Source of the DNA: Octopus sinensis
Lineage: Eukaryota
Assembly (NCBI RefSeq): GCF_006345805.1
Contig: NC_043005.1
Coordinates: 26,288,001-26,352,000, forward strand
Reading direction: 5' to 3'
Length of the DNA: 64,000 nt
Positions 19,131-31,078 of this stretch are shown here, piece by piece. The position numbers and the translations under genes were made by a program. Position 1 is the first letter of the stretch; each line of letters starts with the position of its first letter. Under the pieces are notes generated by a model, which had not been told where the DNA came from, did not search any database, and saw only the letters and a list, made by a program, of their open reading frames with translations.

Positions 19131-19756
19131 TCAAACCAGCACAGATTCCTGCTCAAGATTTGAACTCGTGTAACTGGCATTCTCTGCCGGTTGGGAAGAA
19201 GAAGTAGATGATGATGATGATGGTAATGATGATGAGGATGATGATGATGATGGTGATGATGATGCTGTCGCTGTTGGTGCAACAGGCATCATTTCAATTT
19301 CAGCAGCTTTCCCACCTAGTTCAGTAGTAGTAGTAGTATTACTAGCAGTAATAGTAGTAGTAGCGGTAGTTGTGGTAGTATCCTCAAATTCATCCACGTC
19401 CATCTGTGTAGGGCCTGGAAAACTTCCAGGACTGGAATGCTGTTGTTGTTGGTGGTGGTGGTGGTGGAGGTTGTGGTACTGAAGATGGTGATGATGATGA
19501 TGATGATGACGAAGGTGGAGACTTGAAACAGCAGTAGAATTATTAATACCATGATTACTAGTAGTAACAGAAGTTGTAGCAGTGGTGGTGGTCTCCATAC
19601 TGCTGCAGTGGCCAATGCCATTACATGGATACGGCGTTTCCCGCCGTGCTCGTCGACGTAATCGCTTCTCTTCCATTTTCATCTGGAGATCTTTGACCTT
19701 GCCCCGCAGGGCACTGTCTTCTTCGCTCTGGTTGCCTGGAAAACCTGCACTGCCAC
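19131..19756 (-). CDS. MIDN: Midnolin, last coding exon: C-terminal helix/NLS plus a His/Gln/Thr/Ser-rich tail
   Basis: Acceptor ttccatttcccag|GT in phase 1. Reads GSAGFPGNQSEEDSALRGKVKDLQMKMEEKRLRRRARRETPYP, matching the remembered human ENRATRCKVERLQLLLQQKRLRRKARRD. Ends ESVLV-stop (TGA 19131-19133). Confidence 0.92.
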
Positions 19757-19904
19757 CTGGGAAATGGAACAGATATGAACATTAATAGATGGATAGAATG
19801 GGAGGCATCTGTGGGTGTGTGTGTGTGCACATACATGTATGTGTATGTGTGTGTATAAATGTACATATAGTAAATATACAAACTAATCTTGCTCTTTTAC
19901 TCTT

Positions 19905-20099
19905 TTACTGGTTACAGTCATTTGACTGCGGCCATGCAGGAGCACCGCCTTTAGTTGAACAAATCGACCCCCAGAACTTATTCTTTCTAAGCCTCGCACT
20001 TATTCTATCAGTCTCTTTTGCCAAACTGCTAACTTAAGGGGATGTAAACACACCAACATCAGTTTTCAAGTGATGATGGAGATACAAACACAGACACAC

Positions 20100-20143
<44 letters not shown>

Positions 20144-20375
20144 TATATATATATTATATATATTATATATATATATATTATATATATATATATATGTATG
20201 TATGTATGTATGTATTATATGGCAGTTTCTTTCAGCTTCCAGCTACAAAATCCACTCACAAGGCTTTGGTCGGCCTGAGACTATAGTAGAAGACATTCGC
20301 CCATGGTGCCATGCAGCGGGACTGAACCGGGAATGATGTGGTTGGGAAGCAAGCTTCTTACCACACAGCCACGCC
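19905..20375 (-). mobile_element. SINE family A copy
   Basis: Full-length match to the family A head and tail. Confidence 0.9.
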
Positions 20376-20789
20376 TACACTTATCTTATCTATCTATTTT
20401 TCCATAGGTTTAAAAAAAATTATGAATAGCCTTAATTGAATTTTGACTCTTACAGGGGTTTTATCATAGGTGTCTACATCACTTGACCAATCTCAGAACT
20501 TATGGCACCTTAACTCTGTAAACTGAGTCAGAAGCTTTTGAGAAATCCAGGTGAGATGAATCAAAGGATAAAAAGATTCCATAACTTTCAAATGCTATGA
20601 AGTCAAATTTGTTGAAGAGATTACAGACAAAACCCTTATAGGCAAATACAGGTATAGCAAATACCATACAACATAAATTCTTGATTTGTTACAATTATCT
20701 CTGCCTCTGGATGATGTAACATATTTGCCAAATGAGAAGTGACTAGCACCACATGAGAAAGAATCAAGAATTTTCCAAAGTTGACAAGC

Positions 20790-21499
20790 CTTTTGTTACC
20801 AACCTGGCTGAAACTGGCTCTGAGTACAAATGTCATTTTTTCATAAGTTTTGAATTAAAATCTTCCACAAAACCTTAGTCACAATTTATGTTCCCAACAC
20901 TAGCTGAATGATAAATTATTTTACTAAATTCTTTGTTATATTTAAAATAATTGAAAGAAACACAGACCATCTTGACAGAAAAACAATTCTTAAAATATGT
21001 AATAGACAAACAATTCTTAACTCTTTTGATACCAACCCGGCTGAAACTGCCTCTGTATTACAAATGTCTTGTTTTCATAAGTTTTGAATTAAAATCTTCC
21101 ACTAAACCTTAGTCACAATTTATGTTCCTAACACTAGCTTAATGATAACTAAGTTATTTTACTAAATTCTTTGTTATATTTAAAGTAATTGAAAGAAATA
21201 CAGAGCATCTCAACAGAAATATCGTAACAAAACAGTTAAAATATATAATAGAGAACCAATTCTTGAAATATATAATAGAGAAACAATTCTTAACCCTTTC
21301 GATACCAACCTGGCTGAAACTGGCTCTGGCTCTGTATTACAAATGTTTTGTTTTCATAAGTTTTGAATTAAAATCTTCCACCAAACCTTAGTCACAATTT
21401 ATGTTCCTAACACTAGCTTACTAAAATTTTTGTTATATTTAAAGTAATTTGAAAGAAACACAGAGCATCTCAAAATAAATACAGTAATGAAAGGGTTAA
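20790..21499 (+). mobile_element. Tandem array of three piggyBac-type MITEs
   Basis: The third unit is TTAA|CCCTTTCGATACC...GTAATGAAAGGG|TTAA (21294-21495). Two more ~230-270 bp copies lie directly upstream. Related MITEs occur at ~28566-28774 and ~30751-30975. Confidence 0.75.
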
Positions 21500-28510: not shown

Positions 28511-28789
28511 AATTGAATTGTTTGGCAATAAAGTCTAATGTTGTTTCAACTCAAGAAATTGTCTAACCCTTTTGATACCAACCTGCCTGAAACTGACACT
28601 GGTTTTATAATGCAAACTTCTTGTTTTAATCTGACCTAAAAGGAAATCTTCCATCAAATTTCATGCTAATTTGTCCCAAACACCAACTTAGTAATGATAA
28701 TTTCTCTAAACTGAACATTATTTTCAACAATAATTGAAATAAAAGCAGTGTATTTCAAAGGAGATGTGATAACAAGAGGTTTAAGAGAC

Positions 28790-29130
28790 ACAACGAGGAT
28801 AAGTCTTGTCTAAGCTTACGTATGAGGAACATCTCCAACGGCTGGCATTATCTTCACTCGAACGACAGAGAATGTGGGGACCCCCTCTGAATCTGGCTTT
28901 CAACATCTTCAACAGGAATGTAAATCTACCATTAGCAGAGTTTTTCACCCCTGCACTGAATAGAAGTCTTCATGGGCTTGATCGCAAACTCTATCCCCGA
29001 CACTTTTGACTCAACAGGAAGAAGGCTGCATTCTCCATCCATATCGCAGCTTCAAGGAACAAGCTGCCACAAGGAGATTGTCAACACACAGCGAATACCA
29101 AAGGAGATTTGAAAATGAAACCGCTCTTGA
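28790..29130 (+). mobile_element. CR1-clade LINE 3' fragment
   Basis: Reads LTYEEHLQRLALSSLERQR...FFTP...KL...NRKKAAFS...RNKLP, resembling the CR1 C-terminal LSYEERL..L.L.SLE.RR motif. Confidence 0.75.
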
Positions 29131-30344
29131 GTTTATCATTATGGAAAACCCTACGATCTTCAAAAACATTAACCAGAAAAGACTTGGCATTTAGTGAGCC
29201 TCTAGTTTAAAGGTCAAGGTTATGGGGAACCTACTTACAGTGTGGTTCATTGATGTGTCTGCCCCCACTATACATGTCTAAGGTTTTCCAATGGAGAGTT
29301 TTCCTTTTATGGACAAATCTCTAGCAAACCATCCTACCCTCATGGACCCAACACCACAGCAGTTTGAGTTTCTCAGTTTATTTTCTGCCCCTCTATACCA
29401 TTCCTCAGCTATACAGTTCATAGGCCAGGAAGTGACAACAAATTAAAAAAAGGTATATACAAATAAAAATGGATCTGTTCAGGACTTCCTTTAAAATGTC
29501 TTTATCTGGTGGTTTCACATTAAAATCTTCAAAGTAATCACATCGCATCACCATTGCAAATGCTGCATGTTTTAATAACAAAATCAAAGAAAGGAAATTT
29601 TTTCCCCCTAAAACCTTGAACTATTCATGGAAAGCCTTGTGGCTTGATGTCCCTTTAAAGGACTTCGGAACGCATATTTTAACAACCAGATCACAGAGAG
29701 AACATTTTCCCCACTAAAACCTTGAACTATTCATCAAAACCCTTGTGGCTTGGTGTCCCTTGAAAGGACTTTGAAATGTTTGAGATATACTAAGGAAAAA
29801 GAGACACAGCAAGAGAAGAAGTAAGAGGCTCTTACTTATCACTGAGTGATAAAAGCTACTTCAATGACAGTCATACTAGCTGGTTTCTGAGAGACTGTAT
29901 TCTCTCTAATTATCAAACATATGTAGACCCTTTGCCAATTATTTCTGTCTGAAATATTTTAGAGCAGGAATTCTTAATTTGACGTGGCTGCACTCCCCTG
30001 GGGGAACAAAATGGCATTAGATCAAAGAAACACAGTACATGATTTATTAAAATTGCTTTACAGGATAAAATTATTAATAATTAACACTTGAAAATAACTT
30101 CATTCTGAGTCATCATCATCATTGCTTAATGTCCGTTTTCTATGCTGGCATAGGTTGGACGATTTGACTGAGGTCTGGAGAGCCAGCAGCTGCACCAGAC
30201 TCCAATCTGATCTGGCAATGTTTCTACAGCTGGATGCCCTTCCTAACACTAACCACTCCAAGAGTGTAGTGGGTGTAGTGTGTGCTTATGTATACATATC
30301 TATAGGTATATATATGAGTATATATATATATATATATATATATA

Positions 30345-30652
30345 TCATGTGATCACGTGACTAACCAGGCTATCAGATATTTCTACTCATCGCTGGTCAC
30401 AATGCACTTTGCATTGTTTTACCGTTCAAATGATGCCACTCCGCTGGCTAAGCGAGCATGCCAACAGAAGAAAGAGTGAGAGAAAGTTGCGGCGAAAGGG
30501 TACAGCAGAGGTCGCCACCACCCCGTGCCAGAGCCTCATGGAGACTTAGGTGTTTTTGCTCAATAAACACACACAACGCCCGGTCTGGGAATCGAAACGG
30601 CGATCCTCTGACCGTGAGTCCGCTGCCCTAACCACTGGGCCATTGCACCTCC
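30345..30652 (-). mobile_element. tRNA-derived SINE family E
   Basis: Head ggaggtgcaatggcccagtggttagggcagcgg...ttcgattcccagacc. A partial inverted copy lies at ~44600-44760. Confidence 0.75.
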
Positions 30653-30990
30653 ACATATATATATATATATATATATATGAGCGCTGTCAACAACACATCC
30701 ATAATATACCATCTTCTCCCTCAACATCTTTCACAAACACAATAAATCTTTAACCTTTCAGCATTCACATTAATCTGTCAAATGCAATGCTTACTTATTC
30801 ACATTGTTTTAAATTAGTCTTGCATTATCTCCAAGTTTTGAGATTTAAAAGATGTAACTGTTTCTTTTTAGAATGACATTGCAGGGTAGGAGTGAGAGGC
30901 TGGATCTGACTGGCTGAAACATTAAAACAGATAGAACAATTTGGCCCAGATGTGGCTGGTTTAAATTCTTAAAGACTTGAATAAACTTAC

Positions 30991-31078
30991 CGTCATTCCA
31001 CTTTCCATATTTGGGAACAGGAAAATACGACTGAATTCTGTAACTTGGTTTTCTAACAAACTTCCTTCTTTCAGGGGT
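30991..31078 (-). CDS. MIDN: Midnolin exon: C-terminal half of the ubiquitin-like domain
   Basis: tttttaaccacag|A CCC CTG...ATG ACG|gtaagt, 88 nt, phase 2-0. Reads PLKEGSLLENQVTEFSRIFLFPNMESGMT, matching human RLSSGKLQEFGVGDGSKLTLVPTVEAGLM. Confidence 0.9.

What the first reader, a model, noticed from the sequence alone, without database searches (positions are those of the whole stretch)
19131..31078. Cephalopod midnolin with Ubl, split Catch domain and C-terminal helix all retained
Seen: six exons with canonical splice sites join in one frame (phases 2-0-0-0-1-1-stop, 518 codons plus a partial one). Established: mammalian midnolin uses Ubl, Catch and the C-terminal helix to send transcription factors, including immediate-early gene products, to the proteasome without ubiquitination. 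Inference: the conserved DFLSG..P..L...[11 protein letters not shown] and G...YSGTFSGTL...ILNDLL motifs suggest this pathway is intact in this mollusc, which is relevant to activity-dependent gene turnover in large invertebrate brains. The short exons are invisible in the ORF track.
Basis: partly seen in the sequence, partly recalled or inferred. Interest (0 to 1): 0.7.

Follow-up and report, generated by a model that had tools for sequence, protein, structure and literature searches.

The report
Octopus midnolin gene, last six exons
This stretch holds the last six exons of an octopus copy of midnolin, a conserved adaptor that feeds nuclear proteins to the proteasome without ubiquitin; the reading is correct, but it is an ordinary orthologue whose first exon(s) lie outside the window.

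Summary
On the minus strand, six exons (31078-30991, 27991-27935, 26326-26063, 24380-24029, 22473-22303, 19756-19131) all have AG/GT borders. They join in phases 2-0-0-0-1-1 to give 518 codons, one partial codon and TGA.

The product is midnolin. The best solved-structure hit is human midnolin (E 3e-35), and molluscan midnolins reach E 1e-74. Catch1 is 69% identical to human, and Catch2 keeps the invariant GxFxG strand. The arginine-rich C-terminal helix is also present. An AlphaFold model packs Catch1 against Catch2, and its top 20 solved-structure matches are all midnolin.

An intronless midnolin retrocopy in Octopus vulgaris joins all five junctions seamlessly, which serves as fossil-mRNA support. 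Against the syntenic O. bimaculoides gene, pN/pS is 0.09, with 13 synonymous and 0 non-synonymous changes in the Catch halves.

One caveat applies. Only the last ~27 of ~75 Ubl residues are in the window. The start codon and the rest of the Ubl match nothing in the 32.9 kb upstream.

Function in octopus neurons is untested. This is a known family and a routine orthologue. The practical gain is a better cephalopod gene model than the public ones found.

The parts
30991..31078 (-). Model exon 1 (88 nt, enters in phase 2). It encodes (R)PLKEGSLLENQVTEFSRIFLFPNMESGMT, the last ~27 residues of the Ubl domain (31077-30997) plus the start of the Ubl-Catch linker.
   Evidence: AG acceptor and GTAAGT donor. 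Aligns to human MIDN 80-105 and to molluscan Ubl ends. 86/86 nt identical to the O. vulgaris retrocopy.
27935..27991 (-). Model exon 2 (57 nt, phase 0/0): FHRTDVGVIQALENLSESQ. It encodes the first helix of Catch1; Catch1 starts at 27985.
   Evidence: AlphaFold helix 33-42 with pLDDT around 90. Junctions on both sides are seamless in the retrocopy.
26063..26326 (-). Model exon 3 (264 nt). It holds the rest of Catch1 (to 26243; [28 protein letters not shown]: helix plus two strands), then linker. The linker includes a protostome-conserved helix, [22 protein letters not shown] (26140-26075).
   Evidence: The protein is 100% identical to O. bimaculoides P0121 across this exon, and no nucleotide difference scored in residues 1-80 changes an amino acid.
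24029..24380 (-). Model exon 4 (352 nt, ends in phase 1). It holds the Ala/Thr/Ser/Pro-rich linker, then the first two Catch2 strands from 24089 (GAIIENMQHIGQGVYSGTFS-G). The last Gly codon of the GxFxG strand is split by the intron (G|GT).
   Evidence: The acceptor choice aaacag|GTTCCT is confirmed by the retrocopy.
22303..22473 (-). Model exon 5 (171 nt, phase 1/1): TLDPSLQDLDGKPKRNISTIIHILNDLLGATPQYRV... It encodes the remainder of Catch2 (to about 22364) with its helix.
   Evidence: AlphaFold helix 271-283 with pLDDT around 90.
19131..19756 (-). Model exon 6 (626 nt including TGA at 19133-19131). It holds helix-C (19739-19638; EEDSALRGKVKDLQMKMEEKRLRRRARRE) with the Arg-rich NLS (19667-19638). 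A 155-residue His/Thr/Ser-rich low-complexity tail follows (19622-19158), then the conserved C-terminal LEQESVLV (19157-19134).
   Evidence: AlphaFold helix 319-350 with pLDDT 86-96.
18300..19130 (-). At least about 830 nt of unspliced 3' UTR.
   Evidence: The O. vulgaris retrocopy stays colinear with the window from exon 6 down to 18300, where both run into a TA/TG microsatellite.

Best explanation
The region is the 3' six exons of a functional, intron-containing midnolin orthologue in an Octopus species. By synonymous divergence that species is nearer the O. vulgaris lineage than O. bimaculoides. The encoded protein has the midnolin architecture: the end of a Ubl; a Catch domain built from two halves (Catch1, residues 32-76; Catch2, residues 234-290) separated by a 157-residue disordered linker; an amphipathic, arginine-rich helix-C/NLS; and a low-complexity tail.

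The mechanism below is inferred from the human protein. The two Catch halves fold together into an open beta-sheet cradle. A disordered segment of a nuclear client protein completes this cradle as an extra strand, helped by the GxFxG 'FG zipper' strand. Helix-C docks on proteasome subunit Rpn1/PSMD2 and doubles as the nuclear import signal. The Ubl sits on Rpn11/PSMD14, so the Catch-bound client is held over the ATPase pore and degraded without ubiquitination.

Shown here: gene structure, orthology, retention of motifs and fold, and purifying selection. Inferred: proteasome docking, client capture, and any role in immediate-early-gene turnover. The ATG and the first two-thirds of the Ubl must lie on one or more exons beyond coordinate 64000.
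For: - Gene model and phases.
- Homology: human midnolin chains are the top 20 PDB sequence hits (E 2.8e-35, three matched stretches: Ubl end plus Catch1, Catch2, helix-C). Molluscan midnolins reach E 1e-74 to 1e-59.
- Identity to human by domain, using the boundaries of Gu et al. 2023 (PMC10617673): Catch1 69%, Catch2 49%, helix-C 45%, NLS 8/10.
- Invariant columns in a 40-sequence alignment include G250, F252 and G254 of GxFxG and the ILNDLL helix.
- The AlphaFold2 model gives Catch1, Catch2 and helix-C at pLDDT 82-96. In Foldseek against PDB, ranks 1-20 are all midnolin; the EGR1-MIDN crystal structure 8vqp has TM 0.64 (target-normalised) across both halves.
- All five junctions are seamless in the O. 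vulgaris processed retrocopy.
- Synteny with O. bimaculoides CM046610.1 at 85-93% nucleotide identity.
- Versus O. bimaculoides there are 27 synonymous and 8 non-synonymous differences, pN/pS 0.09. The two Catch-containing segments together show 13 synonymous and 0 non-synonymous.
- Mechanism of the human protein: PMC10617673, bioRxiv 10.1101/2025.02.22.639686, PMC13031973.
Against: - No start codon and no first two-thirds of the Ubl were found anywhere in the window. This holds by tblastn with molluscan and octopus N-termini, by a profile HMM on all six frames, and by blastn with the retrocopy's 5' part. Completeness of the gene therefore cannot be shown from this sequence.
- Pfam has no model for Catch or helix-C, and gives no hit on the 518 residues.
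- The retrocopy is from another genome, so it proves the junctions for the lineage, not for this individual.
- No expression, binding or degradation data exist for any cephalopod midnolin; no paper in the library mentions midnolin together with octopus.
Confidence: 0.9

Rival explanations
1. This is a 5'-truncated or decaying copy. The six exons would be a remnant that has lost its promoter, ATG and most of the Ubl, so no functional midnolin is made from this locus.
For: No N-terminal exon is detectable in 32.9 kb upstream, nor in the 10 kb upstream flank of the O. bimaculoides locus, which is itself full of gaps. Octopus genomes do carry at least one dead midnolin copy, the O. vulgaris retrocopy.
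Against: The frame is open across all six exons with canonical splice sites. Purifying selection against the O. bimaculoides orthologue is strong: pN/pS 0.09, with 0 non-synonymous against 13 synonymous changes in the Catch halves. The locus is syntenic and contains introns. The retrocopy shows that the lineage's mRNA joined an N-terminal Ubl exon to exactly this exon 1 in the required phase (CG|A). The introns inside this gene reach about 3 kb, so a first intron over 33 kb would be long. On my own general knowledge, not measured here, introns of that length are common in octopus genomes.
Confidence: 0.04
2. The protein is the same but its main job differs. As with Drosophila Stuxnet, octopus midnolin may chiefly turn over developmental or chromatin regulators such as Polycomb/CBX, rather than neuronal immediate-early transcription factors. 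The reader's link to activity-dependent turnover in large brains would then not hold. This rival concerns the clients, not the gene's identity, and does not exclude the best explanation.
For: Stuxnet promotes Polycomb degradation in flies, and CBX4 is also a human midnolin client (PMC10617673). The octopus protein shares with other protostomes a conserved linker helix that vertebrates lack, so the client or partner interfaces may differ.
Against: The client-binding strands and the GxFxG zipper are invariant, so vertebrate-type beta-strand degrons should still fit. Nothing here speaks to expression or clients in either direction.
Confidence: 0.25
3. The exon chain is a chance assembly of short open frames in repeat-rich DNA.
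For: The region is full of microsatellites that create long spurious ORFs.
Against: E-values of 1e-35 to 1e-74 to midnolins. The junctions are reproduced in an independent spliced copy. The pattern of synonymous-only change is also inconsistent with chance.
Confidence: 0.01

Closest known systems
Human midnolin (MIDN; PDB 9mbo, 9bui, 9wbg, 8vqp)
   Same: Same order of modules: Ubl end, Catch1, long disordered linker, Catch2, helix-C with Arg-rich NLS, and a C-terminal ...E-x-V-x-(V/A) end. Identity is 69% in Catch1, 49% in Catch2 and 8/10 in the NLS, and GxFxG is kept. The predicted Catch fold superposes on the EGR1-MIDN crystal structure.
   Different: The linker is 157 rather than about 110 residues and contains a conserved helix that the human protein lacks. 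F280 of human GVFSGTFSG is Tyr here. After helix-C there is a 155-residue His/Thr/Ser-rich tail, so the product is at least about 590 residues against 468. Function is untested.
Drosophila Stuxnet and other protostome 'midnolin homolog' proteins
   Same: Same family by homology; insect, crustacean, annelid and brachiopod members are hit at E 1e-35 to 1e-59. They share the linker helix ALAEASRNL(S/T)QxL(K/R)xLS, which octopus keeps as [17 protein letters not shown].
   Different: Insect proteins are much longer, with linkers up to about 450 residues. Octopus is closest to gastropod and chiton proteins, at 40-45% identity over about 65-70% of the query.
RefSeq 'midnolin-B' of Octopus bimaculoides (P0121, 229 aa)
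   Same: Orthologous, syntenic locus (CM046610.1: 90.73-90.77 Mb). The protein is identical through exons 1 (part) to 3.
   Different: That model is truncated and partly out of frame. The assembly has N-gaps over the 5' part of exon 1, the end of exon 4 and all of exon 6, so it lacks part of Catch2 and the whole helix-C. The window's model is more complete.
Octopus vulgaris 'midnolin-like isoform X3' / 'hypothetical protein' (P0001, P0124)
   Same: About 96-98% nucleotide identity per exon to the window's coding sequence. They carry the N-terminal Ubl sequence that the window lacks.
   Different: They are models drawn on an intronless, 5'-truncated retrocopy that has a 1-nt insertion, deletions not divisible by 3 and an in-frame stop. 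X3 is fused to a phosphotriesterase-like first exon. It is a pseudogene at another locus, not the parent gene.
Ubl-UBA shuttle factors (Rad23, ubiquilin)
   Same: These are also Ubl-containing adaptors that bring clients to the 26S proteasome.
   Different: They bind ubiquitinated clients through UBA domains and dock by the Ubl. Midnolin binds non-ubiquitinated clients by Catch and docks stably by helix-C (PMC10617673). No UBA or other Pfam domain is present here.

Membership tests
Midnolin (MIDN/Stuxnet) | N-terminal ubiquitin-like domain (human residues 31-105) | tested here: inconclusive
   Only the last 26-27 residues are encoded in the window (LKEGSLLENQVTEFSRIFLFPNMESG; 10/26 identical to human). 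The rest is absent from the window. A full Ubl-like N-terminus is joined to this exon in the O. vulgaris retrocopy, with a weak Pfam ubiquitin hit (E 0.0012, below cut-off).
Midnolin (MIDN/Stuxnet) | Catch1 (human 112-156): two helices plus two strands ending [11 protein letters not shown] | tested here: met
   Model residues 32-76 are 31/45 identical to human. Many columns are invariant across 40 sequences. AlphaFold gives H33-42, H46-53, E59-65 and E68-74 at pLDDT 82-93.
Midnolin (MIDN/Stuxnet) | Catch2 (human 266-332) with the GxFxG 'FG zipper' strand and the ILNDLL helix | tested here: met
   Residues 234-300 are 33/67 identical to human. GTFSG (250-254) and ILNDLL (277-282) are invariant. 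The zipper is defined in bioRxiv 10.1101/2025.02.22.639686.
Midnolin (MIDN/Stuxnet) | Catch1 and Catch2 fold together into one domain despite a long linker | tested here: met
   This rests on prediction only. The AlphaFold2 model matches the two-half Catch structures 8vqp (TM 0.64 normalised to target, RMSD 3.7 A) and 9wbg_f. All top 20 PDB fold hits are midnolin.
Midnolin (MIDN/Stuxnet) | C-terminal helix-C with Arg-rich NLS (human 377-413) | tested here: met
   EEDSALRGKVKDLQMKMEEKRLRRRARRE is 15/33 identical to human, with 8/10 in the NLS. It is predicted as a single helix, 319-350, at pLDDT 86-96.
Midnolin (MIDN/Stuxnet) | Orthology (reciprocal best hits, synteny) | tested here: met
   All significant hits are midnolins. 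Human MIDN hits only these exons in the window. The locus is colinear with the O. bimaculoides midnolin-B locus. No phylogenetic tree was built.
Midnolin (MIDN/Stuxnet) | Binds Rpn1/PSMD2 through helix-C and Rpn11/PSMD14 through the Ubl | not tested
   This needs the octopus PSMD2 and PSMD14 sequences and complex prediction or pull-downs. Neither gene is in the window.
Midnolin (MIDN/Stuxnet) | Promotes ubiquitin-independent proteasomal degradation of nuclear clients | not testable with these tools
   This is an experimental property, and no cephalopod data were found.

The most novel reading that the evidence does not exclude
Protostome midnolins, this octopus one included, carry a strongly conserved amphipathic helix inside the Catch1-Catch2 linker: ALAEASRNL(S/T)QxL(K/R)xLS, here [22 protein letters not shown] at 26140-26075. 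Vertebrates and amphioxus lack it. If it is a functional module (a lid, an autoinhibitory element or a partner-binding site on the Catch domain), then the mammalian conclusion that this linker is dispensable would not transfer to invertebrates. Client selection in octopus could then be regulated in a way not seen in mammals.
Probability: 0.25. Interest if true: 0.45.

Novelty: already known. Interest (0 to 1): 0.2.

Why it matters
Midnolin is a recently characterised route for ubiquitin-independent destruction of nuclear proteins, including immediate-early transcription factors. Showing that an octopus keeps the substrate-catching domain and the proteasome-docking helix under strong purifying selection is what one would expect for a bilaterian-wide gene. 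It does not open a new question by itself.

The practical value is at the level of annotation. None of the public cephalopod models recovered here is usable. The O. bimaculoides model is truncated by assembly gaps, and the O. vulgaris models sit on a retro-pseudogene. The six-exon model from this window, plus the N-terminus seen in the retrocopy, gives a usable sequence for cloning and for testing the pathway in cephalopod neurons.

Tried and rejected
- **Search for the missing 5' exon(s).** I ran tblastn with six molluscan/brachiopod midnolins and with the O. vulgaris N-terminus. I also ran a profile HMM of 90 Ubl regions against all six-frame segments, and blastn at word size 7 with the retrocopy's 5' 1.4 kb. 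Only exon 1 itself was found, so the exon is not in the window.
- **Third large protein search.** The N-terminal query returned no candidates, not even P0124, which contains the query sequence. That search was wasted.
- **Pfam on the 518-residue product.** No family was found. Catch and helix-C have no Pfam model, and the Ubl fragment is too short.
- **Species assignment.** The window is neither the O. bimaculoides reference (85-93% identity) nor shown to be O. vulgaris. pS to the O. vulgaris retrocopy is 0.058, against 0.133 to O. bimaculoides, which points to the O. vulgaris side. The species stays unresolved.
- **P0001 as the true orthologue.** Rejected once its locus proved intronless and frameshifted.
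- **Poly(A) site from the retrocopy.** The 3' end is lost in a microsatellite and a repeat insertion.
- **Other genes in the window.** Pfam on ten complex open frames gave only a weak zf-RVT hint.
- **Literature on cephalopod midnolin.** None was found.
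Full report
**1. What is in the sequence**

The feature lies on the minus strand. Three-frame translation of 19000-31400 shows the conserved pieces as separate open segments.

| Exon | Coordinates | Length (nt) |
|---|---|---|
| 1 | 31078-30991 | 88 |
| 2 | 27991-27935 | 57 |
| 3 | 26326-26063 | 264 |
| 4 | 24380-24029 | 352 |
| 5 | 22473-22303 | 171 |
| 6 | 19756-19131 | 626 |

- Each exon is preceded by a pyrimidine tract plus AG. 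Each is followed by GT, except the last, which ends in TGA followed by an A-run.
- The phases are 2-0-0-0-1-1. The total is one completing base, 518 codons and a stop.
- The 57-nt exon 2 and the split glycine codon at the exon 4/5 junction (G|GT) would indeed escape any ORF list.

**2. Identity**

- phmmer of the 518-residue product against all PDB chains puts human midnolin first (9mbo, E 2.8e-35). Three stretches match: Ubl end plus Catch1, Catch2 and helix-C.
- The top 20 chains are all midnolin constructs. The first unrelated chain has E 0.019.
- In the 5.8-billion-protein collection the best hits are proteins that sources name midnolin. These come from Octopus vulgaris, Haliotis, Liolophura, Patella, Pecten and Lingula, then insects and vertebrates.
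- Human MIDN (sequence printed in PMC10617673), searched back against the window, hits only these exons.
- Pfam gives nothing. That is expected, because Catch and helix-C have no Pfam model and the Ubl is incomplete.

**3. Domains**

I used the human boundaries given by Gu et al. 2023 (Ubl 31-105, Catch1 112-156, Catch2 266-332, helix-C 377-413, NLS 402-413) and a 14-sequence MAFFT alignment.

| Module | Model residues | Identity to human |
|---|---|---|
| Catch1 | 32-76 | 31/45 |
| Catch2 | 234-300 | 33/67 |
| Helix-C | 317-350 | 15/33 |
| NLS (KRLRRRARRE) | 341-350 | 8/10 |

- In a 40-sequence alignment the GxFxG strand (G250, F252, G254), ILNDLL (277-282) and much of Catch1 are invariant. 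GxFxG is the 'FG zipper' that contacts client strands in the EGR1-Catch crystal structure (bioRxiv 10.1101/2025.02.22.639686).
- An AlphaFold2 model of residues 1-363 gives confident Catch1, Catch2 and helix-C (pLDDT 82-96) and a disordered linker.
- Foldseek against PDB returns midnolin structures at ranks 1-20. Among them is 8vqp, spanning both halves (TM 0.64 normalised to target, RMSD 3.7 A). The split Catch domain is therefore retained as a fold, by prediction.
- The linker is 157 residues and rich in S, A, T and P.
- After helix-C comes a 155-residue His/Thr/Ser-rich tail that other molluscan proteins lack. The conserved acidic MDVDEFED motif and the terminal LEQESVLV follow.

**4. The Ubl and the 5' end**

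- Only the last 26-27 Ubl residues are encoded by model exon 1, which enters in phase 2.
- No match to the rest of the Ubl exists anywhere in the window. This holds for tblastn with molluscan N-termini, a profile HMM of 90 Ubl regions on all six frames, tblastn with the octopus N-terminus and sensitive blastn.
- The first coding exon(s) must therefore lie more than 32.9 kb upstream, beyond coordinate 64000.
- The claim 'Ubl retained' rests on evidence from outside the window (section 5).

**5. Related loci, and independent support for the junctions**

*O. bimaculoides.* The 100%-identical hit P0121 ('midnolin-B', 229 aa) led to locus L001 on CM046610.1.
- It is colinear with window 8.7-44.3 kb at 85-93% identity, so the window comes from a different species.
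- That assembly has N-gaps exactly over the 5' part of exon 1, the end of exon 4 and all of exon 6. This explains the truncated, partly out-of-frame RefSeq model.

*O. vulgaris.* Proteins P0001 ('midnolin-like isoform X3') and P0124 map to L002 (OX597841.1).
- There the whole coding sequence plus at least 830 nt of 3' UTR is contiguous, with no introns.
- This copy is 5'-truncated after an (AAT)n run. It carries a 1-nt insertion, deletions not divisible by three and an in-frame stop. It is a processed retro-pseudogene.
- Because it is a DNA copy of spliced mRNA, it tests the junctions. All five are seamless, base for base.
- It also shows the mRNA's N-terminal coding part...SNRNGVNGKRNGYMKLSICPATGGQIEVNVPEKENGAGLKWNLLRKFRISTEKMTLLFKDR, joined to exon 1 with the codon CG|A. 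That is the phase the model needs.
- This part aligns with molluscan Ubl domains and gives a weak Pfam ubiquitin hit (E 0.0012, below cut-off).

**6. Selection**

- Codon-by-codon comparison with the O. bimaculoides orthologue covers 280 codons outside gaps. It gives 27 synonymous and 8 non-synonymous differences (pN/pS 0.09).
- Ubl end plus Catch1 has 6 synonymous and 0 non-synonymous changes. Catch2 has 7 and 0. The gene is under strong purifying selection.
- pS to the O. vulgaris retrocopy (0.058) is lower than pS to O. bimaculoides (0.133). This places the window's species nearer the O. vulgaris lineage, but the species itself is unresolved.

**7. How it most likely works**

This section is inference from the human system. 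The Catch halves form an open sheet that captures a disordered client segment as a beta strand. Helix-C/NLS binds importins in the cytosol and Rpn1/PSMD2 in the nucleus. The Ubl binds Rpn11/PSMD14 and positions Catch over the ATPase pore, so that clients are degraded without ubiquitin (PMC10617673; bioRxiv 10.1101/2025.02.22.639686; PMC13031973).

Every sequence element that this mechanism needs and that can be seen in the window is conserved. The proteasome partners, the clients and any neuronal role are untested. No paper in the library mentions midnolin together with octopus.

**8. Novelty and verdict**

The family, its architecture and its conservation from flies (Stuxnet) to humans are known. 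Octopus loci already carry the name in RefSeq. This is a correct reading of an ordinary orthologue, so I rate it 'already known' with low interest.

What is new is modest:
- a cephalopod gene model better than the public ones found;
- recognition that the O. vulgaris 'midnolin-like' models sit on a retro-pseudogene;
- a protostome-conserved helix in the supposedly dispensable Catch linker, which is the only lead here with some potential.

Noticed in passing
L002 (O. vulgaris OX597841.1:8863301-8882290), about 14750-17313: An intronless, 5'-truncated midnolin retrocopy with a 1-nt insertion, frame-breaking deletions and an in-frame stop. RefSeq/GenBank models 'midnolin-like isoform X3' (P0001, fused to a phosphotriesterase-like first exon) and 'hypothetical protein' (P0124) are drawn on it. 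They should not be used as the octopus midnolin sequence.
   Followed up: yes
L001 (O. bimaculoides CM046610.1:90732775-90768222, reversed): N runs at 9333-9988, 12816-13631 and 14458-18131: Assembly gaps fall on the 5' part of exon 1, the end of exon 4 and all of exon 6. This explains why RefSeq 'midnolin-B' (P0121, 229 aa) lacks part of Catch2 and the whole helix-C, and reads exon 4 in the wrong frame.
   Followed up: yes
window 26140-26075 (-), model residues 111-132: A helix in the Catch1-Catch2 linker ([22 protein letters not shown], AlphaFold block-mean pLDDT about 78-84). It matches a motif, ALAEASRNL(S/T)QxL(K/R)xLS, conserved in insects, crustaceans, gastropods, a chiton, a brachiopod and annelids: 64 of 120 hits by a strict pattern. 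The motif is absent from the vertebrate and amphioxus linkers sampled, and its function is unknown.
   Followed up: partly
window 19622-19158 (-): A 155-residue His/Thr/Ser-rich tail encoded by trinucleotide-repeat-like DNA (H8 and H5 runs, poly-T, poly-S) between helix-C and the conserved C-terminus. Repeat lengths differ from the O. vulgaris retrocopy (15- and 21-nt insertions in the aligned coding sequence, which run to the longer His/Gln stretch seen in its translation). Other molluscan midnolins lack it.
   Followed up: partly
window 32008-32418 and at least 15 further places (e.g. 4607-5063, 19892-20376, 22797-23199, 31408-31799, 47185-47576, 50048-50495, 56200-56577, 61056-61467): A roughly 410-bp SINE-like interspersed repeat with an internal TA/TG microsatellite. 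Copies are 73-87% alike, lie in both orientations, and several are inside midnolin introns. It produces the recurring spurious peptide ...FQSFDCGHAGAPPLVEQ... in ORF lists.
   Followed up: partly
window 26338-26714, 23575-23954, 25071-25477: An (AAT)n run of about 377 bp lies about 10 nt upstream of the exon 3 acceptor, separated only by the short pyrimidine tract. An (ACC)n-like run of 380 bp lies in intron 4. Intron 3 carries a 125-bp duplication plus a 19-bp tandem array, and is about 1.5 kb longer than in O. bimaculoides (about 167 nt there).
   Followed up: partly
window 2245-3290, both strands: Open frames resembling the C-terminal tails of non-LTR retrotransposon ORF2 proteins. There is a weak Pfam zf-RVT hit (E 0.044) at 2245-2541(+), and a conserved-looking tail at 2598-3089(-). 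These are probably degraded retroelement fragments.
   Followed up: partly
window 31079-64000 (-): No recognisable protein-coding exon was found by the checks run: Pfam on the most complex open frames, and midnolin N-terminal searches. The first midnolin intron, or the upstream intergenic space, is therefore at least 32.9 kb and mostly repeats.
   Followed up: partly
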